From positions 372,001 to 436,000 of the forward strand of contig NW_026948269.1 of assembly GCF_963921235.1 (NCBI RefSeq): a stretch of 64,000 bases of DNA, in the 5' to 3' direction. Each line of letters begins with the position of its first letter. Positions within the stretch are counted from its first letter, which is position 1. Positions 8,663-62,960 of the stretch are shown here, piece by piece. A program made the position numbers and the translations under genes. This stretch comes from Mobula hypostoma. Taxonomy: Eukaryota. The notes beneath the pieces were generated by a model. That model had not been told where the DNA came from. It saw nothing but the letters and a program-made list of their open reading frames with translations, and ran no database searches.

Positions 8663-8829
8663 TGATGCAAGAATGACGTGTCTCCCGCAATGTCAGATTT
8701 TCCAGTTGTTTGAATCTCACAATTACATCACCACTAACGAAATTTAGGCTGCCCTGTAGGAATTGTACTCTGCTGTTGCTCGTGGGAAGTGTTGAAACAC
8801 GTCCCCGTGGAGCTCGAAAATGTTATAAA
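8663..8829 (+). promoter_or_regulatory. Putative core promoter of GPCR paralog 1 (TATAAA 8824-8829; TGATGCAA 8663-8670; TGACGTGTCTCCC 8674-8686)
   Basis: TATAAA lies 88 nt before the ATG, matching paralog 2 (89 nt); upstream motifs are shared with the paralog 2 promoter. Confidence 0.55.
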
Positions 8830-8911: not shown

Positions 8912-10955
8912 ATGTGGCAAACATTTGCAAGTGACAGTGGAATATTGTACGTGATTATGGCAGCCATTGGAGTTCCTGGTAAGCGAGATTAATGCTTTAA
9001 ATTCTGTCACTCCTTGTGTGCGCTGCTGACACTCTCGTAACGGTAATTTTGCCAGCTATGGTAAGTGTAAAACAGATACGATCGGGGAATCCTCTTCATG
9101 AAGGTAAATATTTGAAGACAGATCTGCCTTTTAATGAAGCATCAAAGTATTATGATTTGAGCTTTAAGGAGTCGCTGTGCACAAGTTTTGAGAAGTATTT
9201 TGGGCTGCCAGGTTGTGCAGTGGTAAGCACAATGCTTTACAGTACTAGCTCAATACCCGCCGCTGCCTGTAAGGAGATTGTACGTTCCCATCGTGACCGT
9301 GCACGTTTCCTCCGGGTGCTCCTGTTTCCTCCCACAGGCCAAAGCCGTACCGGTTGTTAGATTAGTTGTAAGTTGTCTCATGATTAGATAGGATTAAAAT
9401 GGGGAATTGCTAGGCCTACCCTGGGCTGTATCTCAGTAAAGTAAAAGAAGTATTATTGATATGAACTGATAGATTAATAGATGTCTAATTGTTAGTTACA
9501 GTCCAGCGTGGAGCATATAGCCTAATGATCCTGCATCAATGTGCACTCTGCACTATGGGACCCCATCACTGCCGGCTACTCTGTTCACCACTATTGGGAT
9601 TGACAGTCACTAGATTTACAATCGGGGTGTTGGGAGCCACCATCACCATTGACAGCAACGGTAAGGATGTAAGAGGAGGCAGATGATGGGGTCTGCAATA
9701 AAAGGGCAAAATGCTGGAGGAAGTCAACGGGTCAAACAGCATCTTTGGAGACAAAGGAAATTCGACCTTTTGGGTGGGGAATATTGTGTCTGTCGCTATA
9801 CAGGGCTTCGACCTTGGTCGTAAATCACCCGTTCACTTCACAAATGCTGCCTGAAACCAATGAGCCAGTGTTTTGATCGATCCAATCCAACTTTAACCCA
9901 AAAAGGGAGGTTCCCGAGGTGCTGCAGAATGTTTACTTTGGATGACAAGCTCTGACCCAATCCATGTTATTTCGCTAAGAGATTTGATTTCGGCATCAGA
10001 TCCATGGAACATTCAGTTGATGTCCGTTTTTTTTTTTGACAACACAGTGAATTTACTGGCGATTATCATCCTGCCCCGGGGTAAATGCGGCCTCTCCACC
10101 TGCACCACTCGTTACCTGGTGGCTATGGCGGTGGCGGATCTACTGGTCATTGTCACTGAGGTAATCCTGAGTAAAATCAAATATCATTACTTCCCACTGA
10201 GTTTCCTGGACATCACTCCTGTGTGCGCTGTTATCGACGTACTCAATCGAATAACCACAAATTGTTCAGTCTGGTTCACCGTCACATTCACCTTTGATCG
10301 ATTTGTCGCCATTTGTTGTCAGAAGCTGAAAACTAAATATTGCACCGGGAAAACTGCGGCTGTGGTGCAAATAACAACCGGACTTCTTCTGTGTCTGAAA
10401 AATATTCCGTTTTACTTCGCAACGGAACCTGGGAAGATTATTGACAACCTCCCGTGGTTCTGCGGTCCCAAGCCAAGCTACTTCACTGACAAAGGTTGGC
10501 TTGGACTTGACTGGTTCGATACTGTTTTAACACCATTGCTCCCATTCGCTATAATTCTGCTGCTCAACGCTCTGACAGTCCGGCACATATTGGTGGCCAG
10601 TCGTGTCCGGAGAGGGCTCAGAGGTCAGAGCAAACGGGAGAACAGTAGAGACCCGGAGATGGAGAACAGGAAGAGGTCTGTGATTTTACTTTTCACCCTC
10701 TCTGGCAGCTTCATCCTCTTGTGGCTGACGGTTGTCGTAGAATTCGTCTATTACCAGGTCAAAGGGACAGGAGAGGCCAGCATTGGTTCCGAAAATGTTT
10801 TGGCGCAAGTTGGCTACGCGTTAGCGAACGTAAGTTGCTGCACCAACACCTTTATCTACGCAGTGACTCAGTCCAAGTTCAGGGAGCAGGTAAAGAGCGC
10901 GATGAAATATCCAGTCACCTCAGTAGTCCGGTTCTTTAAAAAAGCTGCGAAATGA
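8912..10955 (+). CDS. GPR139-like class A 7TM GPCR, intact, 2 exons (8912-8978, 10048-10955), 324 aa
   Basis: Exon 1 reads MWQTFASDSGILYVIMAAIGVP-G|GTAAGC; acceptor tttttgacaacacAG|TG at 10047/10048 gives in-frame GVPVNLLA. Motifs: YLVAMAVADLL (TM2), TPVC, TFDRFVAIC (TM3), PLLPF (TM5), SGSFILLW (TM6), SCCTNTFIY (TM7). AATAAA at 11157-11162. A lineage-specific paralog rather than a demonstrable 1:1 GPR139 orthologue. Confidence 0.92.
9200..9450 (+). mobile_element. tRNA-derived V-SINE (HE1/DANA-type) in the GPCR intron
   Basis: A-box-like 'gcagtggtaagcaca' head and V-core 'tttcctccgggtgctcctgtttcctcccacag-ccaaag'. Confidence 0.75.
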
Positions 10956-11461
10956 GCTCAGCCCAACAGCCCAGGACCTCGTCCCTGTTCAGCGCTGCCT
11001 CATGTCCAATTGCGGGGACGGAGCTGAACGCCCAGTCATCAGCAAGAGTCGCGATCTCCCAGCGTCCAGCGCTACGTTCATTCCCATATTCCCCAGGTTC
11101 AGCGCCACGCAGAGCACGGGAACCACTCTCATATTTTGTGTGTCTGTATTCACAATAATAAAAAGTACATTTCCAAACAGTCAGCCAGCTGGACAGAGTA
11201 CATGCAAATAAATATTGTTAAACTTTCATGTCGGAACCCTCCCATTCTTTTGTGTTTCTATATCAATAATAATGATGATGATAATACATTTCTGCAATAG
11301 GCAGCATGCTCGAAAGAAATTGTGCATCCAAAATGTTTCTACTTTTTAGCAACTGTAATTCGGAATTATGCTTTAGACCAGGCGTCAGTGTTATACATAT
11401 GTCTTTGTGCTAATGAGGACTGAAGGAGGGTGGGGTGATAGAAATAGACAGAGATGGGAGG

Positions 11462-11463
<2 letters not shown>

Positions 11464-11520
<57 letters not shown>

Positions 11521-11530
11521 TGAGAGAGAG
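11464..11530. repeat. (GT)n microsatellite followed by (GA)n
   Basis: About 27 perfect GT units read directly. Confidence 0.97.
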
Positions 11531-12533
11531 ATGAGGGGGAGTTAGAGAAGGAGGGCTGACAGGCTGGCAGACGCGTGATACACGCACAGAAACAGACAGA
11601 CAACGGAAAAGTCAGACAAGAGTGACAGGCGGGCAAACGGGCGGAAATACCAGTATTCCTTTCATGGACCTCACAAGAACTGAGTGTACCGCGCTTGCGG
11701 AAGATGAAATGTAATTACACAGTCTCGCTTTTAATGCTGCTGGAACCATGCCTCCAGTCAGAGATCAGAGTGCGTTGAGGATGGAGACCGAATAACACAG
11801 ACACGCGGGAACTGGGAGTCAAAGCGAGCATGAAGTATTGCTTTGTGTTTTCTTGGAGAAAGACTCAACATTGTGAGCATCGAGCGCAGAAAACGGTTTT
11901 GTTACTGCCGATATTTCCGACGTTCTTAATAGTTTTAATTTCCTGCAACATCTCTGACTTGCATTTCACAGCTGGAGTGTATTTCCCTCTTGCCTATAGC
12001 CGTCGTCATAAACCACTAAACACGCGGCTTTTTAAATAGCCAAACATCAGTAGAGATCTAATTGCCCAAGCGTTAACCTCCTCTTGCACATTGCAAATAG
12101 AATTCGCTTATTTCCTCATATTTCGCGGACAGGAGACATTCCCTCGGTTTTGGTTGTGTAGATCCAACCTGACATACAGACCTCCCTATTTATTTTAGGT
12201 GGACGGGCTCCGCAACAACTCAGCTCCAACTTGTCTCCACTCCGCTCGCTCCAACTTCGCCTCCGACCCCAACTTCTCACGGAACACCTTCAGAACTCCG
12301 GCCTGCGGAGCCTGCATGAAAATGATTGATGGAAATTACAGAAAGGCGAGGAGCAGCGGGCTTTGACTCACATCCCTAGACATTCCAGTCAGTAAAACAG
12401 ATACTTACCTCTCTCTTTCCAGTGAATTCGATATATATCTATTTGCGGAATTTGTATTCGTGCTCATAAACTAGGCTTTCATGTTCTATTGCATAATCTG
12501 ATGTGTGTCCTGACCTTCGTTCTGGAACTTAAG

Positions 12534-12730
12534 CCAACTCCTGATACCCGTCCCCTATATCCACACAACATGACGATCCTCGCACATATCCAAAGATCTC
12601 CAATCAATTCCAACTCCTGACACCCGTCCCCTTTATCCACAGAAAATGACGATCCTCACAGAAATCCGCACAGTTCGAAACTTTGGTTACCCGTCCCTTA
12701 TACCCACACAAAATGACGGCCCTCACAAAG
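12534..12730 (-). repeat. ~76-bp tandem repeat x2.5-3, likely LTR-retroelement leader
   Basis: Unit 'ccaactcctgaYacccgtccccTWtatccacaSaamatgacgatcctc' at 12534, 12610 and ~12686; minus-strand splice donor AGGTAAGT at 12403-12410. Confidence 0.7.
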
Positions 12731-12999
12731 CTCTAATTAGCTCGAAAAGCATGGCGATTAAATTGTCGGTCACGCTATATTTTGACTAAGTCTCACCTTT
12801 ATGGAAATGGTTACAATTTGCTCATAGGACAAACTTTATGCGCACCACAGAACAGGTGCAATTGTGCATGGCATGGACGTTATTCTGCATCTTCCGACAC
12901 AAGAGCAGGATCACATTGAGACGCGGAAGGGTAAAAAAAAATGAGTTGTATTCACAATAGACACAAAAAGAAACAGTAGAACCTACAACGTCTTGGAAA

Positions 13000-15600
13000 A
13001 CTCGGACTAACTCGGCCAGCACTTCACTAGGCAAGGATCAGTCCCACTAACACCGAGGTGTTAGCACTAGCATTTTTAATACATTCCGCGGCACCAAGTA
13101 ATCCACGCCCAGCTAATTAAAAGCCCCGATTCTCGACAAGCTTACCAGTAACTATTCTGATAAGAGAGAAAATTCGAAGGACGCTTTCTTGGACACCAGC
13201 AAACTCTGGAGGAGAAGTAAGTGGAAGTACCCAAAGACAATTGCCGCTTATATATCAGCTAGGTAAGAACAACCTGTAGCACATATAAAAACCCGAAGCG
13301 CGACGATGCATTGTAATTATAATTAATAAAAGGCAGAAAATATGAAACATAAATAGCAAACGACAGAGACCACAGAATACTATACCGACGATCTGTGGTT
13401 ATGACAGAACTCCTCTCCCTAAGGCTGGCACCTGATGGTCCAGGGCTATCTGTAAACGATTTAATTCTGAAATAAGTTTAGGGTCCAAAATATCCCTGGA
13501 AGGAACCGAAACTCTTCCTCCTGATCCAGTCACTCGCAGTCTGCCAAGTATTGTATTTGTCCCCTTAACTTCCGTGGATGAAGCCGTCTAGGGACCATGT
13601 AGAGAGGCTACAGAGGGGCTACAAAGTAAATGTTTCAATGTACAGTCATGAGAGGTGGAATGAATTCTCGCAGAACGGGAAAGTTGTTATTTGTATGTTA
13701 CTGGGTTAATTTTCCTAATGACTCTCGTGAGACCGGTAAAGCGAGGGGCTATTTTCCGTGATTCCAGTTTTGAGTGGAAGATCTTTAGGTGAAAAGCAGA
13801 CCCGCTGACCAATATAGAAATAAAGACCAAGCCGCCTCTTTCTGTGGTCGTTGGCCTGAGTATTTTCTCCTTGAGCCAATTTTGTTTGTGCCTGTGAACA
13901 CAGTGTACAGCTGAGAGTATCCCAAACTCCGGATCAGGGAAGTGAGGCGGCTGAAATCCAATTGTCCTTGAAGCGAGTGATACCAAATGATAAACGTTGA
14001 AGAGGATTGTTACCGAACTCCGACTAGATAAGATGGTCACTCCAAGAGGACAGATAACCGGACAAAAGGCAGCGAAGGGTTCGGTCCTGGTCCTGGTTCG
14101 TCCTCTTTCTCTGTCCACTAGTTTGAGGATGGAACCTCGAGGAATGCCTAGAGAGGTAGCCCCAATCAACGTTCACAATGCTTCCCTAATTTGGAGCTGC
14201 ATTGGGGACCTCTGTTTGAAACAAAGACAGTAGGATAACCACCTGTACGGAAATTCGGTGCATAAGAATATCTGCTGTCTCTCACTCTGACGATCGCTTA
14301 GTTAGAGAAATGAACTGGAATTCCCGTGGACCACAACTAAAATAGCGGGAAGGAATTGATTGGGGGCAGGCAGGTAATATAATCTAGAGAAAGGCGGGGG
14401 ATGGGGCATGAAGGAATGGGCAGAGGTTGAAGAAGTCCCTGAGGAAGGGAATTAAGATCTTTGTACTGGACACAGATATCACAGCCCTGGACGAGCAAAG
14501 AAATATCCATATATATGCCGGACCACCAGCATTTTTTAATGAACTCCAGAGTCCGGCAGATAGCCAGATGATCTGTTATCTCAAAAGTGTGATCCCATTT
14601 AAGAATCACAAAAGTTATCGCAGGTGGGAAAAATAATCGACTAGTCCAAGAACCCCGCTTATTCTCTTCTACGGCTTGCAGATCTTGGGAATATGAACTC
14701 GACGAGACGGGATCAATAACCTTTTGCCCGATGTAATGGGCTCCCAACTTCTGCAGCATATCTGGGTCTTAATTGCATCAGGTTTCTGATCTTTAGAACC
14801 AAGACGATTTGGTATAATAAAATTAAATAGTTATAAAAATAAAACAGTGACCACCAGACTTGCGGGGAATTCAATCTTTTCCCGTCCTAAAAACAAGTCA
14901 AGTACTTATGGTCCGTCCAGAGACTGAATGGGTGCCTAGTCCCCTCAAACCAATCCCATTATTCCTCTTGTGCGAAATTCACCGCCAGGAGTTGTCTATT
15001 TCACATTTCCTCATTCACCTCAGCGAGTGACAGAAAAAAATAGGCACAGGGATGCAGTTTCTGGTCCGCAGTGAATTTTTGAGATAAATCCACACCCATA
15101 CCAATATCAGGGGCCCCGACCTCAACAAGGAAGGGTAGCTCGGGAGCAGGTGAACGTAGAACTGGGGCAGTAACAAAACGGCTCTTGAGCTATCTGACAG
15201 CTGTGTCAACCCTCAGGGACATCGAGTAGATCACGATGTCTTTTTGGTGAGATTAGTCAGAGGGGTCGCTATTGAGCTAAATGTTTGAATAAACCTCTTG
15301 TGCAGGTTTGCGAACCTAAAAACTGTTGAACTTGTTTAACAGAATTGCTTGAAGGACAGACTCGCACTGCACGGGGTTTTTCAAGGTCCATGAGCAGATT
15401 TCATTGGGGGGTGGCAAATTCAAAAACGAGAATTTCGGGACGGGGCGTTCACTTTTCTCTAATGTCACAAACAAGTGATTCTTTAACACGCATTGGAGAA
15501 CCTGACTTACCCCCACTTTCTGCGTAAGAGAGTCTGGCTGGGAACACCCAACAGCTTGAGACATGTAAGGCGTATATAAGTATTAAATGCATTCTCCTCG
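13000..15600 (-). mobile_element. Highly decayed sushi-like Gypsy (RT, RNase H, integrase, chromodomain, PPT and 3' LTR start)
   Basis: VSQVLQCVLKNHLFVTLEKSE (RT); integrase Zn region ...CWWSGIYMDISLLVQGCDICVQ..PQGLLQPLPIPS..LSLDYITCLPP; RKIAPRFTG; minus-strand purine tract GGGAGAGGAGTTC then TGTCATAA at ~13407. LTR extent approximate. Confidence 0.75.
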
Positions 15601-16183
15601 TTTATAAATCTCAGTATTCCGAGCAACAAAAAATCTCATCATTTTTCTGCCTCCCCTTTCACCGCCGGCTTGCTCTTGGTGCCGTGCGATCAAACAGGGT
15701 CACCACCGCATATCCGGCCGGTATTGTATAATCACTGGGTTTGCGTGCAGACCCATCTGTGAATGATATCAGGTTCGGATTAACCAACGACACAGAGAAT
15801 AAATTTGAAAGGGGCGAGGTAACTAATTCTACAGCTTTGATGCAGACATGTGGTTCGCCTTCCTCTGCTAAAGGCACTAACGCGGCAGAGTTTAGTGCCT
15901 ACGCTCTTAATGATAAATTAACCTTAGGAGAATTACCTCATGCGCCGTAGGTCTGACGTTTGTAAAGGTGCAAGGTCACCGCCGAAATCAGGAGAAGCAT
16001 CACTTTAAGGGGCGTTAAGACAGTACAGGCGTAATCTAGCAGTAGCGGCTCAGCTTTTTGAACCAACACTGTGGTGGCGGCTACAGCTCGCAGGCATCCT
16101 GGCATTTCCCTTACCACACGGGCGATGAGGTGGAATGGCAAGCCTCCGGTCTCATTAGTCCCCAATGTTCCTGGGTCAATACT

Positions 16184-16329
16184 GACCCTAACCTAACCCT
16201 AACACTAAAACTACCTAACCCTAAACCTAGCTAAAGCTAAACCTACCTAATCCTACCCCGATCTAATCCTAACCGTATCCTAACCTCACCTTAACCCTAC
16301 CTAACTCTAATACTAAACCTACCCTAACC
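16184..16329. repeat. Degenerate (CCCTAA)n interstitial telomere-like tract
   Basis: Run of CCCTAA/CCTAA/CCTAC variants flanked by the direct repeat CAATACT (16177-16183, 16330-16336). Confidence 0.8.
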
Positions 16330-16965
16330 CAATACTCTCCTGTATCTTCAATGCCCCATACTCCTGAGTCAGCACTGCACTGCCCTGTGCTCCTTTCAGC
16401 TTACGTACACCTCGAAGGGTTTGCTATAGTCAGGCAAACCCAAGTCTGGTGCTTGCTTCAGCGCGTCCTTCGGAACCTCGAAGGCTCCTTGCCTGTCTTC
16501 AATCCACAGGACATTATCTCTTTCAAAACCGCTGTTCTGAGGACAGCATCACGGAGACGGTGTTCTGGGTTGCACTATTTGAAATCCCGCACAAAACCCC
16601 TTCAAAACCCACAAACCCCACAAAACAGCGACAGGTAACGCTGGAGTATTACACGGACTTTGAGCCGGCCGAAGAACCCCCTTTCTGCAGGCTATTACGT
16701 TCCATATTTATTAGCACATTTATATACACCGTCCAGTCTTGTATTTGCCAATTCAAATTTGTTAATTTGAAGGAGTGGGTCACCTCAGGTCCGAGGCAAT
16801 TTAGCAGCGTCGCACTCGTTATGTTCTAAGGAATTCCTCCATTAGCTTCCCACGTATTGGTAAATCTAGCAATAAAATCGCTAAATGTTTCTCCGTTCAT
16901 TTGCATACATCTCGTGAGTTCTCCAAAATCACCTACTCACTGCCTTACTCACTCTTCCTTCAGTT

Positions 16966-17002
16966 AGTCCTGACGAAGGGTCTCGGCCTGAAACGTCGAC
17001 TG
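16966..17002 (+). ncRNA. Minimal type-I hammerhead ribozyme motif on a short Penelope terminal-repeat insert
   Basis: AGTC-CTGACGA-A-GGGT-CTCG-GCCT-GAAA-C-GTC-GACT: stem I AGTC/GACT, intact CUGANGA and GAAA core, GUC cleavage triplet. Confidence 0.8.
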
Positions 17003-17949
17003 CGCCTCTTCCTATAGATGCTGCTTGGCCTGCTGCGTTCACCAGCAACTTTGATGTATGTTACTTGTTTAGCTATCAGGTTGCTTACAATCCCTTAGCC
17101 ATCCTATCATGACATCCCTGGATGATGCTGGACCGTCTCCTGTCGAGTCCCCTGATGCATATATTCTTACTTCAGGGATTTCCTCCGTTGCCGTCTGCTA
17201 AGGGACTATAATATTCTCGGTAGGGCCTGTATATCTTCCGGCAAGGGATGAAAAATTCGCTGGTCTGGATCAACCGCTTCAGCACCGCCACACGTTTCCG
17301 ATTTGGGTGGGGAGCATAATTCCGAATTGGCTCAGCCGGGCTCAAAGGTTTTAAAATGGCCATATCTCACAAAACCAATATCTGACCCAACCCCTGATCT
17401 GCGGAACCGGCTGGCCCTGTTTCCGTCTCTGCCTTGGATCGAGTTTTGCTGACGAGACCAATTCATGTACCCGCCGAAGAATCTGGATTCTCCCTGCCCG
17501 TCCCGCGGTCTTGTGATTCTGACCTTTACACCGTTCTAAGCGCCGCCCCACTGGTGGCGGCTGTCGTTGCCTCTGCCGCTGGTGATCACGTTGCTGAGAC
17601 AAACCCAGAACCATCCCATGTGTTCGGGGAGCTCCGGATAAGGAGGTGGGGCGTTATCTGAGGGTACAGTCCGGTGCCTGAGACAGTCGGAGCAGAGGGT
17701 CTCGATGGGTTACCGCTGCCCTCTGAGGGGCCTGGTTTTCTGCTTTCTTGCTGTTAACCTTTGGTGGCTAATGCTTTCTCGCCATCTCTTCCAATTTATT
17801 AAAACACCACATCATATATTCTAAGTCCCAGTTTGGATTCCTAACCCCAACTTCTGTTTCGTGTTTCCAGTACTGAATGTTCTTTAAATCGAAAGATCCA
17901 CCATACAGGCAATCACCGCAAATATATGCATGCACGTCACCGGAGAATG

Positions 17950-18245
17950 GCACAGAGTACCTCGTGTTCCCTGTTTCCAAATAAACCTTGTCCACATGTT
18001 TGGCGGGGTCGGAGGTTGACTTTATGTAGCCGAGGAAACCCGAGTGTTTCATACATATTGCGTCTGGAATCCTTTCTGACCACACCCAGCAAATTCAACC
18101 GCATCCAAACCCCTTGTTCTAAGGAGTTGCGAGTCAATATTAGTAAAGTTAAAATCACCCGTCACAAAAACGTTATTATTATTCCAGTGTTGCATAATAT
18201 GCCTCCCTATCTGCTCCTCGATGTCTCTGTTACCACTAGGGGAAA
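17950..18245 (-). mobile_element. CR1 endonuclease fragment
   Basis: IEEQIGRHI..FVTGDFNFTNID in ORF 18049-18315. Confidence 0.7.
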
Positions 18246-18835
18246 AACACGCAAGGAGCAAGAACTCACCGCGTAATGTGGTTCTCCACCTGCCTTCCGC
18301 TGTCGCCGATACCACTACAGAGCACCGAGCTACGTGTAGTTGGTTGACAACATGCTTTTAAAGCAAGCAACATTATGAAGTGCAGCTTGTTATTGAAGAT
18401 TCCTCTTCTGCACTCCCACTTAGTCTTCTTCCCTGCAAACGCTGGCGCGGTCAGTGTCAGTGCTTGGACTGGTTTAAAACAGATTGTGGGCCGGTGAAGA
18501 CAAAACAGCACATGAAACTTATTCGGCCTCTGTGAAGCTTGAAATACTGGCCGTTCCTTTGGATTTTATCGAAGCGGAGCGAGAAAGGAACATGGGTATC
18601 ACCACGGAAACAGCGAGACAGCTGGTCATCCTGAGTAAGAAAGGTTAACACATTTCCTTCCCGATCGTTGCCAGATGAGATGCCGCCCCTCTCATTTATG
18701 CTCTGCCTCACGATAACAGCTGAGAACGCCGCAGACAGGGGAATAATTCCGAACAGTGGAATAAGAATTAAAGATTTATGAATCAAGGAAATTAGAATTA
18801 AAATTAGATTTACTTCTAATTTAGCGGAGACAACA

Positions 18836-20257
18836 TGTTATGTACCCCTGGGGTTCGTTTTTGCTGTGGACTGTCACTTTTAAGGCACAAGAAAGAACTG
18901 AGACTATCTTTTGGATTTCTGCTGAGAGAGAGACAGGGGCAAAGTCTGCCTTTCAGCCTGCGCTTACACTTTTACAAGGACACTGACTACTGCTGTCAGC
19001 TTCTGGGCTGCCATGGAAAGAGAGGGGAAGAGAGAGAGAGCAACGATCAGCGCGTAAGTCATCGTGGTAACCGAGGCTGGAGTTATTTGATGGACAATCG
19101 ATGTTATGGTTTCTCTGCAGCGCTTTTGCCTTTTACAAGGGCAGCTACAGACACAGAGAAACACAGGCTCAGAGTCAAGATGGATTCGGTCATTGAAAGA
19201 CACCAGTCAGTCGGTCGCCGGATTAAACTTTCAGTGACCCGAAAAGGAGTGAGTTGAGATCGATCCTGAGTATTGATAAATGACTCCCACAACTTGTCTG
19301 CAACTAGAACAAGTTTGCAGGAAGAGAACAGAAGAGAGATAGGTTTGAAACAGAAGAAACCGAGTGACAAAGAGGTCACTGTTTGGACTCTCTCTCTAAG
19401 TAGCCCGTAAGGGTGAGTTTGATTCTATTCGAATGCGAAGCTGTGATTGTCAATTTGTTAATCTGCAGGAGTGGGTTCTCTGGTGAGGGGAAACCTTTGT
19501 GAATACCACTTGTGTGTTACTCTTGTCTGGGTGTGGTAGTTCACTGATAAAAGGCACCCCTGTGGCAAATCACGGTTGGCGTTATTTCGTATGTCGTGGA
19601 ACTGGATAGGTGGCTATCACAGTTGTGTGTTTGGGGTAACCTTGTGTGGAAACTACCTGTGTCTGATAATCCTAGCCTGGGTTGGTAGTTTTACCACTTG
19701 AAGACGGTACCACAGTGATAGAATACTGTTGGTGATGATCCATACGTGGATTCTGTTGGAGTACCCTGTGGCCACCACTTTGGGATGTCCCGTAGCTGAA
19801 TTCGGGTGCGGTACCAGTTGTGTTGGAAGGATATTCGTTGACGATCACTGTCGGTGATATTTCGTGTGTGGAGTGGAAAAACTTCGGGGATAAAACCTAC
19901 TATTTCTATTTTGTATTGTTGTCGTGGAATCTGTGGAATATCGACGTAATTGTCTTCTCTCGGCATTTACCCTGGATTACAAATATCTCTCTCCATCACT
20001 GCTCAACTCAACACCACGAAATGAACTGGACTCTACTCATCACTGTAAGACTGTGTCCATTTACCTCTAGGCTTGAAGAAGCTTGTTTATATGTATATAT
20101 TTCCACACTTATATACATATAATGTTTCCTAACCTGTTTAATGTATCTGAATTTATATGACTGTATGGCGTAGTTATTAACAAACAGCATTAGTTAATAG
20201 ACTCCAAAGTGTTTTCTATTTCTGCTGGCACTTTAACCCGTCACGGGGTACGTGACG
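18836..20257 (+). mobile_element. Solo LTR (~1.4 kb) with internal degenerate tandem repeats
   Basis: Terminal inverted repeats TGTTATGTACCCC ... GGGGTACGTGACG; repeated 'accacttgtgtg/cctgggtgtggtag'-like units at ~19480-19860; no ORF. Orientation tentative. Confidence 0.65.
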
Positions 20258-20934
20258 ACTCTGAAAGTGCAGTAAATCGCTTATATCGGAATGAAAAGAA
20301 GAGAGTCAACACCTTACGCTAACTTGGGCCAAAACTCTACCTATGAACTTTGTATTGGAGACATCAGTTGCAACACGGAACATATATATGACTCTAATGT
20401 TTAAATATCTGTGTGAAGCGCCTCTTCCTCTGCTTCAAGGAGAGAATGACACATTCTCCGCTGCAATCTGAAATGTTCCAGTTTCTGCTGAAATCTCTCT
20501 GCAGAAGCTCCACTGCCATCACACCCGTTACTTGTGAAGAGCAGAAAGGTTACGATACTCTAATCGGACCAATCTTATATATTATTGCATCATGACCTTT
20601 CCTGTCAGTGGAGGCGGGTATTCGGAATATATTAAGCACCACATTATCGATCCGCATCCCTACCGTCATTGATGTTTGAACTTCCATTTCTTGTCCGTCT
20701 CTACATCAGCACTCTTTGTGAATATCCCAACCCTACTCACCCATGAAGGTAATCACTGCGTACCTCAATATTGACCTCTCCCTGAACTTCACTGTCCATC
20801 TTACAAACTGATCAATTTCATGCAATAACTGATGACTCTTTGGCTTATTACTGCACCGGGTAACGAGACACGTGAAAGGCTCTTCTTCTGCGTCATTCAC
20901 TTCAGACCAGTCAATACATAAGTACATCGAGGTA

Positions 20935-22420
20935 GCAGATCAGAATAGAAAAACAGAATATACAATCAGCACTACAATATGCAGGAGGAACCCAGCAGGC
21001 CCGACAGCATCTAGGAAAAGAGGACAGTCGATGTTTCGGGCCAAAATCCGTCGGCAGGACTGAAGAGTATACTGATGGGACTTGAAAGGAGAGGGGTGAA
21101 GAACAGAGCTGTGAAACAAATTGGTGAAAGAAACAGAAAGGCAGGGAAGAAAGAAAAGAGGGTAGTGGAAGGAGCACGAGAGGGAGGCGATGGGCTGGCA
21201 AGGACATGTGAGAGAGGGAATCGGAAATGGTGAAGTTGGGGGATGTGAGTCATTGCCGAAAGTTCGAGAAATCAATGTTCATGCCATCGGTTTGGAAGCT
21301 ACCCAAATGGAACATAACGTGTTGTTCCTCCAACACAAGTGTGGTCTCAACACTCGAGTGGAGCAGGACATGGATAACATATCGGAATGGGAATGGGAAG
21401 CAGGTTTAGAATGGGTGGCCACTGTGGGCACTGGGAGATCCCACTTTTTCATACAAACGGAGCATAGTTGCTCGGCGAAGCAGTCCCCCAATCTACGATG
21501 GAGCTCACAGATATACGGGAGGCCACGTCGGAAGCACCAAACACAGAATATGATCCCAACAGGCTCACCAGGAAGGACTGTTTAGGGTCGTGAATGGTAG
21601 AGAGGGAGGAGGTGTAGGGGCAGCTGCAGCAGTTGTTCTTGCAAGGATAAGTGCCAGGAAGGATATCAGTGGGGAGTGACGAATGGACAAATGAGTCGCG
21701 TAGGGAGAGATGTCTGTGGGAAGCAGAAAGTGGGAGAGGTGTTGTTCCTCCAACCTGAGTGTGGCTTCATCTTTACAGTAGAGGAGGTCGTTGATAGACA
21801 TATCAGAATAGGAATGGGATGTGGAATTAAAATGTGTGGTCACTGGGAGATCCTGCTTTCTCTGGCGGACAGAGCGTAGGTGTTCAGCAAAACAGTCTCC
21901 CAGTCTGCGTCGGGTCTCGCCAATATATAAAAGGCCGCATCGGGAGCACCGGACGCAGTATATCACCCCAGCCGACTCACAGGTGAAGTGTCGCCTCACC
22001 TGGAAGGACTGTCTGGGGCCCTGAATGGTAGTGAGGGAGGAAGTGTAAGGGCATGTGTAGCACTTGTTCCGCTTACACGGATAAGTGCCAGGAGGGAGAT
22101 CAGTGGGAAGGGATGGGGGATGGGACGAATGGACAAGGGAGTCGAGTAGGGAGCGATCCCTGCAGAAAGCAGAGAGAGCGGAGAGAGAAAGATGTGCTTG
22201 GTGGTGTCATCCCGCTGGAGGTGGTGGAAGTTTCGGAGAATGCCGTACTGGATCCGGAGGCTGGTGGTGAGGACAAGAGGAACCCTATCCCTAGTCGGGT
22301 GGCGAGAGCATGGTGTTAGAGCAGATGTGCGTGAAATGGAAGAGATGCGGTTCAGGGTCGTGTTGATGGTGGCGGAAGGGAAGCCCCTTAATTTGAGGAA
22401 AGAGGACATCTCCTTCGTTC
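20935..22420 (-). mobile_element. Penelope-like retroelement fragments (RT C-terminus, GIY-YIG endonuclease, terminal repeat)
   Basis: HFTCESAGVIYCVRCSRCGLLYIGETRRRLGDCFAEH (GIY-YIG); degenerate hammerhead on minus at ~21025-21062 (CTGCCGA core). Confidence 0.9.
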
Positions 22421-22589
22421 CTAAACAATGCTGTGTTATATTTGCAGAGAAAGTGCAATTCAGATTGTTGAACAAATAAATACGACTATTGACCTAATTG
22501 TCGACAACGCTACCAATTTAGTTCATCTGCAAATCAATTGTCACTGTTGGAACATATGTAACGAATGCAGATGCTCTGTCGGTTTAAGC

Positions 22590-22842
22590 ATTTGCATCAT
22601 TTCGAAGGTCATATGTAGAATTATTGAATTCTTTTGCTTCATACTGGCTCCAAACTTCGTGACAGCTGTTTCAACAATAACGATAATAAAACCGAGAGTG
22701 TTTTACAACAACATTCATTGACTTCTGAACCGTCATTTCTTCGTCGTTGAGATTTTGAAATTTTGCATCAAGCTCCCAGCTGTTGGGAGACACGTCAGCC
22801 TTGTGTAGTATTGAATATTCGGTGTGCTGGAGCGAGTATAAA
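22590..22842 (+). promoter_or_regulatory. Putative core promoter of GPCR paralog 2 (TATAAA 22837-22842; TTTGCATCA 22591 and 22762; GGGAGACACGTCA 22785-22797)
   Basis: TATAAA lies 89 nt upstream of ATG 22926; motifs shared with paralog 1. Confidence 0.55.
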
Positions 22843-22925
22843 TGAATGAGCGTGGAGACTCATCAGCTCAGTGTTTCTTCAGCGAGATCGCGGGCAGCTG
22901 GAAGTCAGGCTGAATCTCACACAAC

Positions 22926-25344
22926 ATGCTTGAAACATTGTACAGTGTGAGAAAGATATGGTACATGATCATTGCCGTTATTGGTGTTCCTGGTAAGAAC
23001 ATCGGCGAACAAACATTTGCTAGTCTGTGTGCGCGGTCTTTGGACTCGTTCAGTTACCGACAGCGTTGTGATGCCGGTGTATCGGTGAGTGAGGTACCGA
23101 CATTGTAACACAACAATCTGTGCATTCAGAGGTTCCCTTACAGTTTAATCCACGGCTTCGACTGAAAATAAACCGGCAGCTGAAACTAATGTAGAATGGC
23201 AGATTGGGGAGATGGAGTCATTTTGCGGATTCATGGCGGAGAGTTTTGATTTATCAATGTAAAGCCGCTGTCCGATAATCCAACCCCCTCGGCACCTTTA
23301 CGGGCTACTTTGTGATATTCCGTATCAATATTGTAATATGCTTTAAACTTAAATATAAATGTATTGCGCTGTGTTTAAATAAATTGCTGCAAGTTTGAAG
23401 GGAACGCGGGAAGAGGATCGTCGTGATATTTCGGGGAGAGCGGTAGACATCACTTGTGACTCAGATTCGGAACCATTGGGAGTTTTCGAAAATTCAGATC
23501 AGGGTCTGTGCGCGCTTTAGTGTGCCAGAGTTTGTTTCCACACCCTGTTGTCCGTGGCGAAGCGGGAGTTAAGAGCCAACACTGTGGTTTCCGTAAGCGG
23601 CTGGCGGGATAAGGTCCGTGCGATACTCCGCTCCGGAACAATAACCATTGAATCATTTAGAATAATGCTGCAGTAGTTTGGAGCAACTCCTAAAAGAGGC
23701 AGATGTTTTGAAGTACTTATATTGTCTTTGCTTTAGAAATTGAATGTTTTAAGCACAAACGTGCAAAATATCTGCAACGTTAATCGGGTCAGAGGGAATA
23801 TTTAAAAGCGAGAATTGAAACTTTCGATCCGATCCCTTGCTATAGTGTGAAGGAACCCGAGTAGTTGCGGAATTTGAATAAGCGAATCCGGTGAAACCCT
23901 GTGGGCGAGTGACAAACGGGAGCCTAGAAGGAGACGAAGACAATGCAACGGGAGAACTAAATTTGCTTTGAAATTTGTAAATGGACAGAGCTCGGGTTTC
24001 GTGGTATGCAGAGAATGCCAGAACATAGGTGACTGGAACGCGGCAATCACCGTCGCTGAGAAAAAAAATGCCAATTCTTCAGGCTTTCCCATGAGTCAAA
24101 ACCCAATGCTGGGAGATTTACGTTGATTTCTCCAAAGTGCCCCCAGCGATCAGTTGACAATGCCTCTTTCCATGACACTGCTCCTCTACCAGTAACAAGC
24201 ACCGCACCGTTTTACACCTTTTTCAAATTCCAGAAACGAGTTGTCCACAAGGTTTTATTGTTCTCAATGTCCAGCATATCTCTGCACTGAAACACATGGA
24301 CCGCGAGAGAGTAAATCCCTCATACTTCTGACGAAGGGTCTCGGCCTGAAACGTCGACTGTACCTCTTCCTAGAGATGCTGCCTGGCCTGCTGCGTTCAC
24401 CAGCAACTTTGATGTGTGTCCCTCATACTTCTTGCTGTTTCCCCAGTGAATTTCGTGACGATGGTGATCCTGAGCAGGGGAAAGTGCGGCCTCTCTACCT
24501 GCACCACTCGCTACCTGGTGACCATGGCAACGGCGGATCTACTTATCATCATCTTTCAAGTCATTCTATGGCGGGTCAGTTATTATTATTTCCCAGGGAC
24601 TTTCCTGGATATCACCCCCGTACGCAGTGTGATCTATGCCCTGGGACTATGTTCTGGCTGGTTTACCGTCACTTCTACGTTTGATCGGTTTGCCGCCATC
24701 TGTTACCAGAAGTTGAAAACGAAATATTGCACCGGGAAACTGCGGCTGTGGTTTTGACAACAACCGGCGTTCTGCTCTGTTTTACCAACGCGCCCTACTT
24801 CTTCATATATCGTCCTGCGAAAGTGATTGACAGTATTCCATGGGACTGTATTCGAAAGCCGAGATACTCTACGGATCACGGATGGGTGGGATTTAGATGG
24901 TTTTCTGCAGTTGTAACTCCGTTAATCCTGTTGGTGTTAATACTACTGTTCAGCTCTCTGACAGTCAGACACATTTTAGTGACTCGTCGCGTCCGTGAGG
25001 GGATGAGGGGTCAGAGCAAGTCAGGGAACCGCAGTGACCCGGAGATGGAGAGCAGGAGGAGGTCTGTGATTTCACTTCTCACCGTCTCCGGAAGCTTCAT
25101 CGTCCTGTGGTCGGTGAATGTTGCCGAGTTTCTTTATAACACCATCGCCGGGTTGGATCAAAATTATTACAACGATTCTGAATACATATTTCCACAATTG
25201 GGATACATGCTGGTGATATTAAGTTGTTGCACAAACACGTTTATTTATGGGGTAACTCAGTCCAAGTTCAGAGAGCAGTTCATCAGCGCAGCGAAATATC
25301 CGCTCACGTCAATTATTGAGCTAATTAATAGACAAAACATTTAA
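22926..25344 (+). pseudogene. GPR139-like GPCR paralog 2, probable pseudogene (exons 22926-22992, 24447-25344)
   Basis: Same 67-nt first exon and phase-1 intron as paralog 1 (VIGVP-G|GTAAGA; ccccAG|TG). One-base deletion at 24737-24739 (gggAAActg versus gggAAAActg), 4-codon deletion in TM3, and TPVC changed to TPVR (loss of the conserved disulfide Cys). Confidence 0.85.
24328..24418 (+). mobile_element. ~90-bp Penelope-derived insert starting at a hammerhead core, with 14-bp TSD
   Basis: TCCCTCATACTTCT duplicated at 24316-24329 and 24419-24432; insert begins CTGACGAAGGGTCTCGGCCTGAAACGTCGACTG. Confidence 0.85.
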
Positions 25345-46236: not shown

Positions 46237-47427
46237 TCAATGACGCACATTTGATTGATTTGGCTGAGAGAATCTCCTTCCAAAGTCTGAGCAGGTGATC
46301 GGCCTCTCTCCTGTGTGAACTCGCTGATGTCCCTTAAGTTGAGATGACGAAGTGGATCCTTTTCCACACTCTGAGCAGGTGAATGGCCTCTTCCCAGTGT
46401 GAACTGACAGGTGTCTCCGTAGTAGAGATGAAAAAGTGAATCCCTTCCCACAGACTGTGCAGGTTAATGGCCACTCCCTGGTATGAACTGACTGGTGTCT
46501 CAGTAGTTGAGATGACAAACTGAATCCCTTCCCACAGTCTGAGCAAGTGAATAGCCTCTCCCCAGTGTGAACTCGCCGATGTACCTTAAGTTGTGATGAC
46601 GTAGTGAATCTTTTCCCACAGTCTGAGCAGGTGAATGGCCTCTCCCCTGTGTGAACTGACTGGTGTCTCAGTAGTTGAGATGAAAAAGTGAATCCCTTCC
46701 CACAGTCTGAGCAGGTGAATGGCCACTCCCCAGTATGAACTGACTGGTGTCTCAGTAGTTGAGATGACAAACTGAATCCCTTCCCACAGAGTGAGCAGGT
46801 GAATGGCCTCTCCCCAGTGTGAACTCGCTGATGTACCTTAAGTTGAGATGACGAAGTGAATGTTTTCCCACAGTCTGAGCACGTGAACGGCCTCTCCCCT
46901 GTGTGAACTCGCTGATGTATTTTCAGATCGGATGACTGAGTGAATCCCTTCCCACAGTCTGAGCAGGTGAACGGCCTCTCCCCAGTGTGAACTGACTGGT
47001 GTCTCCGTAGTTGAGATGACAAAGGGAATCTTTTCCCACAGACTGAACATGTTAATGGCCTCTCCCCGGTATGAACTGACTGGTGTCTCAGCAGCTGATA
47101 TGACTGAATGAATCCCTTCCCACATTCTGAGCAAGTGAATGGCCTCTCCCCTGTGTGAACTGACTGGTGTCTCAGTAGTTCAGATGAGCAAGTGAATCCC
47201 TTACCACAGTCTGAGCAGGTGAACGGCCTCTCTCCAGTGTGAACTCTCTGATGTACCTTCAGGTTAGATGAGCAAGTGAATCCCTTCCCACAGACTGAGC
47301 AGGTAAATGGCCTCTCTCCAGTGTGAACTCGCTGATGTACCTTCAGTTTAGATGAGCAAGTGAATCCCTTCCCACAGTCCGAGCAGGTGAATGGCCTCTC
47401 TCCGGTGTGAACCGGCTGGTGAGGCAT
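46237..47427 (-). CDS. Tandem C2H2 zinc-finger protein, 396 aa, 13 complete fingers plus one degenerate
   Basis: Repeated CxxC-x12-HxxxH with TGERPF linkers. Probable acceptor tttcAG at ~47829; degenerate fingers upstream (47430-47720) and downstream (45560-46236); no KRAB/SCAN/BTB seen. Confidence 0.93.
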
Positions 47428-61703: not shown

Positions 61704-62960
61704 TAGACCATAAGACCATAAGACAAAGGAGCAGAAGTAGGCCATTCGGCCCATCGAGTCTGCTCCGCCATTTTATCATGAACTGATCTATTTTATTCTA
61801 TTTAGTCCCACTGCCCCGTCTTCTCACCATAACCTTTGATGCCCTGGCTACTCAGATATCTATCAATCTCTGCCTTAAAGACACCCAATGACTTGGCCTC
61901 CACTGCTGCCCGTGGCAACAAATTCCATAGATTCACCACCCTCTGACTAAAAAAATTTTTTCGCATTTCTGTTCTGAAAGGGCGCCCTTCAATCCTGAAG
62001 TCATGCCCTCTTGTACTAGACTCCCCCATCATGGGAAACAACTTTGCCACATCCACTCTGTCCATGCCTTTTAACATTCGAAATGTTTCTATGAGGTCTC
62101 CCCTCATTCTTCTAAACTCCAAGGAATACAGTCCAAGAGCGGAGAAACGTTCCTCATATGTTAACCCTCTCATTCCCGGAATCATTCTAGTGAATCTTCT
62201 CTGTACCCTCTCCAACGTCAGCACATCCTTTCTTAAATAAGGAGACCAAAACTGCCCACAGTACTCCAAGTGAGGTCTCACCAGTGCCTTATAAAGCCTC
62301 AACATCACATCCCTGCTCCTATAGTCTATTCCTCTAGAAATGAATGCCAACATTGCATTCGCCTTCTTCACTACTGACTCAACCTGGAGGTTAACTTTAA
62401 GGGTATCCTGTACGAGGACTCCCAAGTCCCGTTGAATCTCAGAACTTTGAATTCTTTCCACCTTTAAATAATAGTCTGCCCATTTATTTTTTCTGCCAAA
62501 GTGCATAACCATACACTTTCCAACATTGTACTTCATTTGCCACTTCTCTGCCCATTCTTCCAATCTATCCAAGTCTCTCTGCAGACTCTCCATTTCCTCA
62601 GCACTACTGGCCCCTCCACCTATCTTCGTATCGTCAGCAAACTTAGCCACAAAGCCATCGATTCCATAATCTAAATCGTTGATGTACAATGTGAAAAGAA
62701 GCGGCCCCAACACGGACCCCTGTGGAACACCACTGGTAACCGGCAGCCAACCAGAATAGGATCCCTTTATTCCCACTCTCTGTTTCCTGCCAATCAGCCA
62801 ACGCTCTATCCACGTATGTAACTCTCCCGTAATTCCATGGGCTCTTATCTTGTTAAGCAGTCTCATGTGTGGCACCTTGTCAAAGGCCTTCTGAAAATCC
62901 AAATATACAACATCCACTGCATCTCCCTTGTCTAGCCTACTGGTAATTTCCTCAAAAAAT
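61704..62960 (-). mobile_element. Young 5'-truncated CR1 LINE with uninterrupted RT C-half ORF (61802-62917)
   Basis: YLDFQKAFDKVPH, GVPQGSVLGP, FADDTK in one 371-aa frame; (AGACCATA)n tail at ~61705-61722. Confidence 0.93.

What the first reader, a model, noticed from the sequence alone, without database searches (positions are those of the whole stretch)
8912..25344. Tandem GPR139-like receptor pair: sample of a birth-and-death chemoreceptor-like GPCR family
Seen: two same-strand paralogs 14 kb apart with the same architecture (67-nt first coding exon, phase-1 intron in TM1, TATAAA 88-89 nt upstream, very short N-terminus). Intracellular faces are conserved (RGKCGLSTCTTRYL, QKLKTKYCT, DPEME.R..SV) while the extracellular loops diverge, and one copy is broken. 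Known: mammalian GPR139/GPR142 are single-copy aromatic-amino-acid-sensing GPCRs, and cartilaginous fishes have very few canonical OR genes. Inference: these belong to an expanded, functionally uncharacterised receptor repertoire that may serve chemosensation or immune/nutrient sensing.
Basis: partly seen in the sequence, partly recalled or inferred. Interest (0 to 1): 0.75.

Follow-up and report, generated by a model that had tools for sequence, protein, structure and literature searches.

The report
Devil-ray orphan receptor gene pair
Two neighbouring receptor genes in a devil ray, one intact and one dead, belong to a large shark-and-ray family of orphan cell-surface receptors whose ligand pocket has diversified while its one-copy counterpart in amphibians and sturgeon keeps a fixed, GPR139-like pocket; what the family senses, and where, is still unknown.

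Summary
Copy A (8912-8978 + 10048-10955) encodes an intact 324-aa class A GPCR. Copy B (22926-22992 + 24447-25344) has the same 67-nt first coding exon, phase-1 intron and TATAAA at -88/-89, but is a real pseudogene: a 1-nt frameshift seen in read-derived contigs, a 12-nt TM3 deletion and 14 changes at family-fixed sites.

The scan has already found this family many times on other DNA of this genome (Mobula hypostoma); this is one more sample.

New here:
- A and B are old paralogs (59% identity; introns and flanks unalignable), not a recent tandem duplication.
- The family is not without kin outside cartilaginous fishes. Its best-supported sister is a gene found in one copy per species in amphibians and sturgeon ("Y").
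- Y shares the intron position and a DPEM..RRxS loop motif.
- Y keeps four of the five GPR139 agonist-site residues invariant.
- At similar overall identity, pocket entropy is 1.2-1.45 bits in the ray/shark family against 0.16 bits in Y.

The family is only a distant cousin of GPR139 (21-25% identity).

The chemosensory reading remains untested. Three probable RNA runs of this species hold none of copy A, and I found no paper on the family.

The parts
8663..8686 (+). Upstream element of copy A: TGATGCAA (8663-8670), GAA, then the 13-mer TGACGTGTCTCCC (8674-8686), 238 nt before the ATG
   Evidence: The 13-mer occurs exactly twice in the window, once before each gene; 0.07 matches are expected by chance with up to 1 mismatch.
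8824..8829 (+). TATAAA box of copy A, 88 nt before the ATG
8912..8978 (+). Copy A, first coding exon (67 nt; Met1 to Pro22 plus 1 nt; N-terminus and first half of TM1)
   Evidence: tblastn 100%. The same 67-nt exon is in a little-skate member (L005 10029-10095).
8979..10047 (+). Copy A intron (1069 nt, GT..AG, phase 1)
   Evidence: An intron at the same codon and phase is in the Xenopus Y gene and the Seriola X gene.
10048..10955 (+). Copy A, second coding exon with stop; completes an intact 324-aa class A GPCR
   Evidence: No deviation at any of 105 sites fixed in >=95% of the family. AlphaFold model of residues 16-306: pLDDT 86.5, pTM 0.83.
12199..12363 (+). Downstream exon that NCBI's model (P0001) joins to a cryptic donor at 10889/10890, replacing the family-conserved C-terminus
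   Evidence: The unspliced reading keeps the family consensus KSA.KYPVTS.
13687..14759 (-). Decayed Ty3/Gypsy-type integrase fragments between the two genes
   Evidence: Pfam Integrase_H2C2 at 9e-07; SH3_Tf2-1 weak.
22763..22797 (-). Upstream element of copy B. Reverse complements of TGATGCAA (22763-22770) and of the 13-mer (22785-22797), each inverted relative to copy A and 14 nt apart
22837..22842 (+). TATAAA box of copy B, 89 nt before the ATG
22926..22992 (+). Copy B, first coding exon (67 nt, open)
22993..24446 (+). Copy B intron (1454 nt, GT..AG, phase 1). It holds a very high-copy SINE-like repeat at about 24256-24437
   Evidence: Depth on that stretch is 10^4-10^5 times the unique depth in every run.
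24447..25344 (+). Copy B, second exon: a pseudogene. Lesions: Cys3.25 to Arg at 24623-24625; 12-nt deletion in TM3 between 24649 and 24650; 1 nt missing after 24739 (frameshift)
   Evidence: No gap at the deleted columns in 80 family members. 14 of 105 family-fixed sites are changed. The frameshift is confirmed by a read-derived contig at unique depth.

Best explanation
Copy A is a working member, and copy B a long-decaying pseudogene, of a large orphan class A GPCR family (called F here). F is specific to cartilaginous fishes and is auto-named 'probable GPR139'.

Origin. F most likely arose from one ancient jawed-vertebrate gene. That gene survives as one copy per species in amphibians and sturgeon (called Y here). 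Y still has a GPR139-type pocket.

How it works. In sharks, rays and chimaeras the gene multiplied and its orthosteric pocket diversified (TM2, TM3, TM5-7 and ECL2). The activation switches stayed almost fixed (D2.50, DRF, W6.48, N-T-x-x-Y), and so did the whole intracellular face (ICL1 KCGLSTC, ICL2 QKLKTKYCT, ICL3 DPEMESRRxS, helix 8). Each receptor would therefore bind a different small ligand, and all would signal through one common transducer. In other words, F is a ligand-diverse sensing repertoire that evolves by birth and death.

Shown: the gene models, the lesions in B, the family size, the phylogeny, and the pocket-versus-face contrast.

Inferred: that pocket diversity means ligand diversity, that there is one shared transducer, and that the repertoire is sensory.
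For: Gene and family:
- Gene models and Pfam 7tm_1.
- The model is a 7TM bundle with an ECL2 beta-hairpin, pLDDT 86.5. Its nearest folds are GPR139 and peptide-type class A receptors.
- All 120 best hits are chondrichthyan at 61-99% identity.
- There is a sharp drop from about 120 clusters at E<=1e-30 to 23-28% identity outgroups.
- A chimaera member nests inside F.

Phylogeny (careful ML tree): (Y,F) 100/99, F monophyletic 96/86, Y 100/100, X 99/99.

Characters shared by F and Y: the DPE[MV]..R[RK][RK]S motif and the phase-1 intron after G-x-P. The deepest F lineages still have Pro6.50, as Y does.

Pocket versus signalling face:
- F extracellular half 1.42 bits against intracellular half 0.49 bits (p 2e-19). 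Pocket 1.50 against G-protein face 0.29.
- Control at similar identity (0.71 against 0.76): F pocket 1.21-1.45 bits, Y pocket 0.16 bits, X pocket 0.66 bits.
- Y keeps F3x33, W6x48, K6x51 and N7x38 in 17 of 17 species (W6x48 in 16 of 17). F varies at 3x33, 6x51 and 7x38. These residues were shown by mutagenesis in PMC5430874.

The two copies: A has 0 changes at 105 fixed sites and B has 14, plus two indels.
Against: - No expression evidence. Three probable RNA runs of the species hold none of copy A's sampled words. On B they show only short pieces, 90-95% alike, that come from paralogs, and one unspliced-looking contig.
- No ligand data.
- An AU test does not formally reject F+X without Y (delta lnL 31.5, p 0.07).
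- True GPR139 and GPR142 could not be placed in the tree.
- Synonymous sites are also more conserved in the intracellular-half codons of A against B (34% against 57% changed, p 0.005). Part of the 'fixed face' within a genome may therefore reflect gene conversion rather than selection alone.
- In the catshark, the 50 most specific 'brain & olfactory epithelium' genes included no GPCR (PMC11979771).
Confidence: 0.6

Rival explanations
1. Internal signalling. F receptors are brain or endocrine receptors for a diversified set of endogenous peptides or metabolites, as GPR139 is a brain receptor. They would not be detectors of external chemicals.
For: - The nearest solved receptor is GPR139.
- The fold and the ECL2 hairpin are those of peptide-type class A receptors.
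- The single-copy sister Y has a fixed pocket, as expected for an endogenous ligand.
Against: - About a hundred paralogs with frequent pseudogenes and a hypervariable pocket are unusual for endogenous-ligand receptors. They would need a matching expansion of ligands, and none is known.
- The very short N-terminus and small size fit small-ligand sensors.
Confidence: 0.15
2. Barrier or immune sensing. F is used by immune, mast-like, epithelial or somatosensory cells, in the way of MRGPR or FPR expansions in mammals.
For: - Lineage-specific expansion with pocket diversification also marks MRGPRX and FPR families (established knowledge).
- Chemokine receptors are among the next-best sequence matches.
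Against: - Other notes of this scan report correctly spliced RNA of immune genes in this species, so RNA from lymphoid cells appears to exist. I did not check whether those are the same runs as X1-X3.
- X1-X3 hold none of copy A.
- The chemokine-receptor matches are 5-6 orders of magnitude weaker than the GPR139 match.
Confidence: 0.12
3. Largely neutral expansion. Copies were spread by segmental duplication in transposon-rich DNA, and most are unexpressed or on their way to decay. The conserved face partly reflects gene conversion.
For: - The two genes sit in retroelement debris.
- B is dead.
- A has a 90% identical copy on another contig with the same downstream exon.
- Synonymous sites are conserved in the conserved segments.
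Against: - Intact ORFs and a fixed intracellular face are kept across sharks, rays and a chimaera. Gene conversion within one genome cannot explain that.
- A has no change at 105 fixed sites, whereas the pseudogene B has 14. Constraint on intact copies is therefore measurable.
Confidence: 0.08

Closest known systems
GPR139 (and its paralog GPR142), vertebrate orphan class A receptors activated by L-Trp and L-Phe
   Same: - GPR139 is the best solved-structure match by sequence (E 2.8e-12 for A, 2.2e-21 for the family profile) and the first Foldseek PDB hit.
- Both lack Pro7.50 in the NPxxY motif (N-x-x-x-Y).
- Both have a short N-terminus.
- The model shows an ECL2 hairpin.
   Different: - Only 21-25% identical.
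- Many copies instead of a single conserved gene.
- Four of the five agonist-site residues are not kept. F109, H187, R244 and N271 correspond to R, D, V, Y in A and are variable in the family. Only the generic W6.48 is kept.
- DRF instead of DRY.
- Pro6.50 is lost in the core of the family.
'Y': an unnamed orphan found in one copy per species in amphibians and sturgeon, auto-named 'probable GPR139' (e.g. Xenopus tropicalis XP_031757816.1)
   Same: - Best-supported sister of the family (100/99).
- Same phase-1 intron after G-x-P.
- Same DPE[MV]..RRxS loop motif and F-D-R-[FY].
- About 32-33% identity to the family.
   Different: - One sequence per species in the 20 amphibian species listed, plus one in sturgeon, at 66-74% identity to the newt query among amphibians.
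- The pocket is nearly invariant (0.16 bits) and GPR139-like (F3x33, W6x48, K6x51, N7x38).
- N instead of D at 2.50.
'X': a second conserved jawed-vertebrate orphan (Latimeria XP_005988539.1; catshark XP_038675532.1; sturgeon, teleosts, amphibians, reptiles). It may be one of the 'GPR210' sets listed under GPR139/GPR142 in PMC6504862
   Same: - About 33-35% identical to A.
- Same intron position and phase.
- Same size.
   Different: - Single-copy orthologs, present in sharks alongside the expanded family.
- Lacks W6.48 and the DPEM motif, and has ERF instead of DRF.
- A separate clade (99/99).
Known vertebrate chemoreceptor repertoires (OR, TAAR, V1R/ORA, T2R) and the expanded MRGPR and FPR families
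   Same: - Works-like resemblance only: many paralogs, pseudogenes, small receptors with short N-termini.
- Variable pocket with a constant signalling face.
- Clustered genes with a shared promoter element.
   Different: - Not a member of any of them. Pfam reports only 7tm_1, and the best matches are GPR139 and peptide receptors.
- The coding region is split by an intron in TM1.
- No expression or ligand evidence.

Membership tests
Class A (rhodopsin-like) GPCR | 7tm_1 profile match and a seven-helix fold | tested here: met
   Pfam PF00001 E 7.4e-22, 78.5 bits against a cut-off of 30.5. AlphaFold model pLDDT 86.5, pTM 0.83, seven helices plus helix 8. The top 500 Foldseek PDB hits are at E<=0.001, and every one of the 50 listed is a class A receptor.
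Class A (rhodopsin-like) GPCR | Activation and folding residues: N1.50, D2.50, Cys3.25-ECL2 disulfide, R3.50, P5.50, W6.48, N7.49, Y7.53 | tested here: met
   All are present in copy A and fixed in the 80-member core set. Variants: DRF for DRY, Thr for Pro7.50, no Pro6.50. Copy B fails: Cys3.25 to Arg, Pro5.50 to Leu, a TM3 deletion and a frameshift.
GPR139/GPR142 proper | Orthology-level sequence similarity to GPR139 | tested here: not met
   E 2.8e-12 and 49.7 bits for A. 21-24% identity in structure alignments. At least 14 non-vertebrate or other clusters score better than true GPR139 would.
GPR139/GPR142 proper | Agonist-site residues F109(3x33), H187(5x43), W241(6x48), R244(6x51), N271(7x38) (mutagenesis, PMC5430874) | tested here: not met
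   A has R, D, W, V, Y. B has L, S, W, N, Y. The family is variable at 3x33, 6x51 and 7x38.
GPR139/GPR142 proper | Placement inside the GPR139/142 clade in a tree | not tested
Cartilaginous-fish expanded family F ('probable GPR139' of NCBI annotation) | Signature motifs: ICL1 RGKCGLSTCTTRYL, ICL2 QKLKTKYCT, ICL3 DPEME.R..SV, TM7 SCCTNTFIY | tested here: met
   Present in A and B; fixed in >=95% of 80 members.
Cartilaginous-fish expanded family F ('probable GPR139' of NCBI annotation) | Placement inside the F clade | tested here: met
   A lies in a ray/skate clade (100/99). B lies in the 26-row core (100/99). F is monophyletic at 96/86.
Chemosensory receptor repertoire (functional class) | Many paralogs with pseudogenes (birth and death) | tested here: met
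   All 120 best hits are members. About 120 clusters at 50% identity. B is a pseudogene. The scan holds 27 notes on this genome that match 'GPR139' (unchecked).
Chemosensory receptor repertoire (functional class) | Excess variability at ligand-contact positions relative to the rest of the protein and to single-copy relatives | tested here: met
   Pocket 1.21-1.45 bits against G-protein face 0.28-0.29 in F. The pattern is reversed in Y (0.16 against 0.33) at similar overall identity. dN/dS by site was not computed.
Chemosensory receptor repertoire (functional class) | Expression in sensory cells of a chemosensory organ | tested here: inconclusive
   Only three small probable RNA runs of unknown tissue were listed. 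They held no words of copy A and only paralog-like fragments on B. No paper or held supplement gave data.
Chemosensory receptor repertoire (functional class) | Activation by external chemical cues | not testable with these tools
   Needs heterologous expression and ligand screening.

The most novel reading that the evidence does not exclude
F is the missing large chemoreceptor repertoire of cartilaginous fishes. It would be a roughly hundred-gene odorant or tastant receptor family, expressed in olfactory, taste or solitary chemosensory cells under its shared promoter element. It would have evolved from an amino-acid-sensing GPR139-type receptor, independently of OR, TAAR, V1R, V2R and T2R.
Probability: 0.2. 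Interest if true: 0.9.

Novelty: new member of a known kind. Interest (0 to 1): 0.58.

Why it matters
Sharks and rays smell very well, yet they have very few OR, TAAR and V1R genes, and V2Rs dominate (PMC6368271, PMC10116579). A large receptor family that I found in no paper, with a diversified pocket, is an obvious candidate to fill part of that gap, or to reveal another ligand-diverse sensing system.

The single-copy amphibian and sturgeon counterpart found here gives a practical handle. It has a fixed pocket that keeps the GPR139 agonist-site residues. Xenopus is tractable, so its ligand and expression can be tested directly and then used as the starting point for deorphanising the shark and ray receptors.

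The pair in this window adds a clean contrast inside one locus. The intact copy has no change at 105 family-fixed sites. The dead copy has 14 changes and two indels.

Tried and rejected
- Assembly error as the cause of B's frameshift: rejected. A read-derived contig at unique depth has the same sequence, and B carries many other lesions.
- Recent tandem duplication of A and B: rejected. They are 59% identical with dS about 1, and their introns and flanks do not align. A's sister is on another contig.
- Dating the A/B split before the shark-ray split: the best tree puts B with shark sequences (99/90). An AU test does not reject B joining A's ray/skate clade (p 0.44), so I do not claim it.
- F+X excluding Y: disfavoured (delta lnL 31.5) but not rejected at 5% (p 0.07).
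- Expression: both run searches and the one read-laying run gave no RNA holder of A. This is no evidence of silence.
- Whether the related species (X8) shares B's frameshift: unresolved, because paralog contigs swamp the site.
Latimeria P0228 is not on record.
- Callorhinchus member: an acceptor is visible just inside the annotated start. No upstream first exon was found with a strict pattern.
- The skate member P0032 has the 67-nt exon, but no TATAAA or 13-mer within 400 nt upstream. The -88 TATA is therefore not universal.
- Literature: ten searches found no description of the family. Only 'GPR210' sets from bony fishes in PMC6504862 may correspond to X or Y. No supplement of the catshark paper is held.
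- True GPR139 and GPR142 could not be added to the trees, because there was no referable sequence and long typed strings are barred.

Full report
**1. Observation**

The window carries two same-strand genes with one architecture.

Copy A:
- The ATG is at 8912 and the 67-nt first coding exon runs to 8978.
- It has a GTAAGC donor and an intron of 1069 nt. The acceptor is a T-rich tract followed by AG at 10046-10047.
- The second exon is 10048-10955. The spliced 975 nt give an open 324-aa protein.

Copy B:
- The ATG is at 22926 and the 67-nt exon runs to 22992.
- It has a GTAAGA donor, a 1454-nt intron and a CCCCAG acceptor. The second exon is 24447-25344. The 965 nt are out of frame.

Shared features:
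- Both introns are phase 1 and split the codon that follows the Pro of G-V-P in TM1.
- TATAAA lies 88 and 89 nt before the two ATGs.
- A translated search finds only these two copies in the 64 kb.
- Copy A matches Pfam 7tm_1 at 7e-22.

The exon 2 translation is 100% identical to the NCBI protein 'probable G-protein coupled receptor 139' of Mobula hypostoma (P0001). That model starts at Met16. It also splices from a cryptic donor at 10889/10890 to an exon at 12199-12363, which discards the C-terminus conserved across the family.

**2. Copy B is a real, long-decaying pseudogene**

- One base is missing after the AAA codon at 24737-24739.
- I laid contigs of a DNA run of the same species on B. 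A 139-nt contig at the same depth as the unique flanks (106) spans the site without a gap. Contigs that carry the extra A are paralogs at much higher summed depth. The run may be the sample the assembly came from, so this rules out a consensus slip rather than giving independent support.
- B also lacks four residues in the outer half of TM3. None of 80 full-length family members has a gap there.
- B differs at 14 of the 105 positions that are fixed in at least 95% of those members. These include Cys3.25 of the conserved disulfide (to Arg) and Pro5.50 (to Leu).
- Copy A differs at none of the 105.
- B's terminal branch is about twice as long as its neighbours'.
- Its ATG, splice sites and TATA box are still intact.

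**3. A and B are old paralogs**

- They share 59% of residues. The synonymous distance is about 1.
- Their introns and 3-kb downstream flanks do not align.
- In a careful ML tree, A is sister to a 90% identical paralog on another contig (P0005). That paralog even shares the odd downstream exon of the NCBI model.
- A lies inside a 13-row clade of Mobula and Rhinoraja sequences (100/99) that excludes B.
- B groups with horn-shark and sawshark sequences (99/90).
- An AU test does not reject B joining the ray/skate clade (p 0.44). The age of the split is therefore open, but a recent local duplication is excluded.
- The 11 kb between the genes holds decayed Ty3/Gypsy integrase fragments and other retroelement debris.

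**4. The family**

- The 120 best protein matches to A are all from sharks, rays and skates, at 61-99% identity, and nearly all are auto-named 'probable GPR139'.
- An exhaustive HMMER pass over 1.84 billion cluster representatives gives about 120 clusters at E<=1e-30. It then falls sharply to 23-28% identity outgroups from amphioxus, a nemertean, an anchovy and unnamed sequences.
- One member is from the chimaera Callorhinchus and nests inside the family. Diversification therefore began before chimaeras and elasmobranchs split.
- In the read-laying, paralog contigs at 90% or more nucleotide identity pile up on the conserved segments to 40-70 times the unique depth. This is a rough sign of many copies, not a count.
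- Earlier notes of this scan report the same family in many other windows of this genome and put it at roughly a hundred genes (unchecked by me).

**5. Relatives outside cartilaginous fishes (new here)**

Three non-chondrichthyan clusters score at 1e-31 to 1e-35 against A. Searches seeded from them define two conserved genes.

'X':
- Found in Latimeria, catshark and other sharks, sturgeon, teleosts, amphibians and reptiles.
- 46-66% identical to the Latimeria protein.
- Sometimes fused to TMEM183A in annotations.

'Y':
- One sequence per species in the 20 amphibian species listed, at 66-74% identity to the newt query. A 46% sturgeon homolog follows.
- The next best hits after those are the chondrichthyan family, at 32-33% identity.

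Tree and shared characters:
- The careful tree gives (Y,F) 100/99, F monophyletic 96/86, Y 100/100 and X 99/99.
- An AU test disfavours F+X without Y but does not reject it (p 0.07).
- Y and F share the loop motif DPE[MV]..R[RK][RK]S and F-D-R-[FY], which X lacks.
- The deepest F lineages keep Pro6.50, as Y does, while the core has lost it.
- The phase-1 intron after G-x-P is at the identical codon in the Xenopus Y gene (L001, 73-nt first exon, GT..AG) and in the Seriola X gene.
- The 'shared architecture' of A and B is therefore an ancestral trait of the wider group.
- A little-skate member has the same 67-nt first coding exon.

**6. Relation to GPR139**

- Human GPR139 is the best solved-structure match: 2.8e-12 for A and 2.2e-21 for a 33-member profile. 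The next receptors are at about 1e-15.
- It is also the first Foldseek PDB hit to the model. There it is barely ahead of opioid, ghrelin, neurotensin and galanin receptors, at 16-21% identity.
- Mutagenesis defined F109(3x33), H187(5x43), W241(6x48), R244(6x51) and N271(7x38) as the GPR139 agonist site (PMC5430874).
- Copy A has R, D, W, V, Y at those places.
- The family varies freely at 3x33, 6x51 and 7x38.
- Y has F, Q, W, K, N. All are invariant across 17 species except W, which one species lacks. The alignment was checked directly against the GPR139 chain.
- The family is thus a distant cousin of GPR139, not a member. Its single-copy sister still looks like a GPR139-type receptor.

**7. 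Pattern of variation**

- In 80 core members, the extracellular half averages 1.42 bits of column entropy and the intracellular half 0.49 bits (Mann-Whitney p 2e-19).
- Canonical pocket positions average 1.50 bits and G-protein-contact positions 0.29 bits.
- All GPCRs tend this way, so I used the single-copy relatives as controls.
- At similar mean pairwise identity (0.71 against 0.76), 16 random F members give pocket 1.21 and face 0.28 bits.
- 16 amphibian Y orthologs give pocket 0.16 and face 0.33 bits.
- X gives 0.66 and 0.52 bits.
- The excess of pocket change is therefore specific to the expanded family.
- One caveat. Between A and B, synonymous changes are also rarer in intracellular-half codons: 34% against 57% of identical-residue codons (p 0.005). 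Gene conversion over the conserved segments may add to the constancy within a genome.
- Conversion cannot explain the same constancy across sharks, rays and a chimaera.

**8. Function**

- The evidence supports a repertoire of receptors with different ligands and one common intracellular partner.
- Nothing shows where they are expressed.
- The run search listed three small probable RNA runs of this species, tissue not given. They hold none of A's sampled words.
- On B they show only short fragments, 90-95% alike, from paralogs. One 693-nt contig runs from upstream sequence through exon 1 into the intron of a paralog, so it looks unspliced or genomic.
- Contigs show presence, not absence.
- Ten literature searches found no description of the family.
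- The 2019 'cartography' of vertebrate class A receptors lists unnamed bony-fish and coelacanth sets ('GPR210') under GPR139/142. These may be X or Y. It had no cartilaginous fish (PMC6504862).
- Papers on shark chemoreceptors cover only OR, TAAR, V1R, V2R and T2R. They report very few of the first three (PMC6368271, PMC10116579).
- In the catshark, the 50 most specific 'brain & olfactory epithelium' genes held no GPCR (PMC11979771).

**9. Verdict**

- The family-level inference (expanded, birth-and-death, pocket-diversified) is supported and now has a control.
- 'Tandem duplicates' and 'GPR139-like' need toning down.
- The sensory role is still a hypothesis.
- The family appears undescribed in the literature I could search, but it is already annotated automatically and has been found repeatedly by this scan.
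- It is a new family of a known kind, a lineage-specific expanded GPCR repertoire.
- The amphibian/sturgeon counterpart is the most useful new lead.

Noticed in passing
window 8663-8686 (+) and 22763-22797 (-): An exact 13-mer TGACGTGTCTCCC occurs only twice in the window, 238 and 141 nt before the two receptor ATGs (0.07 expected). Each lies next to a TGATGCAA octamer, which is C/EBP-ATF-like by my recollection. Both parts are inverted in copy B, and the spacing is 14 nt instead of 3. The rest of the two promoters does not align. This is the subject of other notes of the scan.
   Followed up: partly
window, copy A against copy B coding regions: Synonymous sites are more conserved in codons of the intracellular half than of the extracellular half: 34% against 57% of identical-residue codons differ (p 0.005). 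This hints at gene conversion or nucleotide-level constraint over the conserved segments.
   Followed up: partly
window 10889-12363 (+): NCBI's model for copy A uses a cryptic GT at 10890 inside the ORF and a downstream exon at 12199-12363 with a junk-like 55-aa tail. The 90% identical paralog P0005 on another contig has the same tail, so the recent duplication included at least 1.4 kb of downstream DNA.
   Followed up: partly
window 24256-24437 (inside the intron of copy B): A SINE-like repeat with enormous copy number. Summed contig depth is 10^4-10^5 times the unique depth in both DNA runs, and it is also very abundant in the probable RNA runs.
   Followed up: no
related proteins P0228, P0292, P0295 and locus L002: 'X' is a conserved orphan receptor of jawed vertebrates: sharks, coelacanth, sturgeon, teleosts, amphibians and reptiles. 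No mammal or bird appeared among the 120 hits listed. It lacks Trp6.48 (Cys or Ser instead) and has ERF for DRY. Two annotations fuse it to TMEM183A. In Seriola it lies between an SLC12-type transporter gene and eIF2D.
   Followed up: partly
window 46237-47427 (-): An open 396-aa C2H2 zinc-finger ORF with 12-13 fingers. The window is otherwise rich in retroelement remains, such as a reverse transcriptase at 61802-62917 (-).
   Followed up: no
protein P0187 (Mustelus asterias), a deep member of the family: It keeps the most GPR139-like pocket of the family members inspected: F3x33, H5x43, W6x48, P6.50 and K6x51. That makes it a good first candidate for testing aromatic amino acids on a shark receptor.
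   Followed up: no
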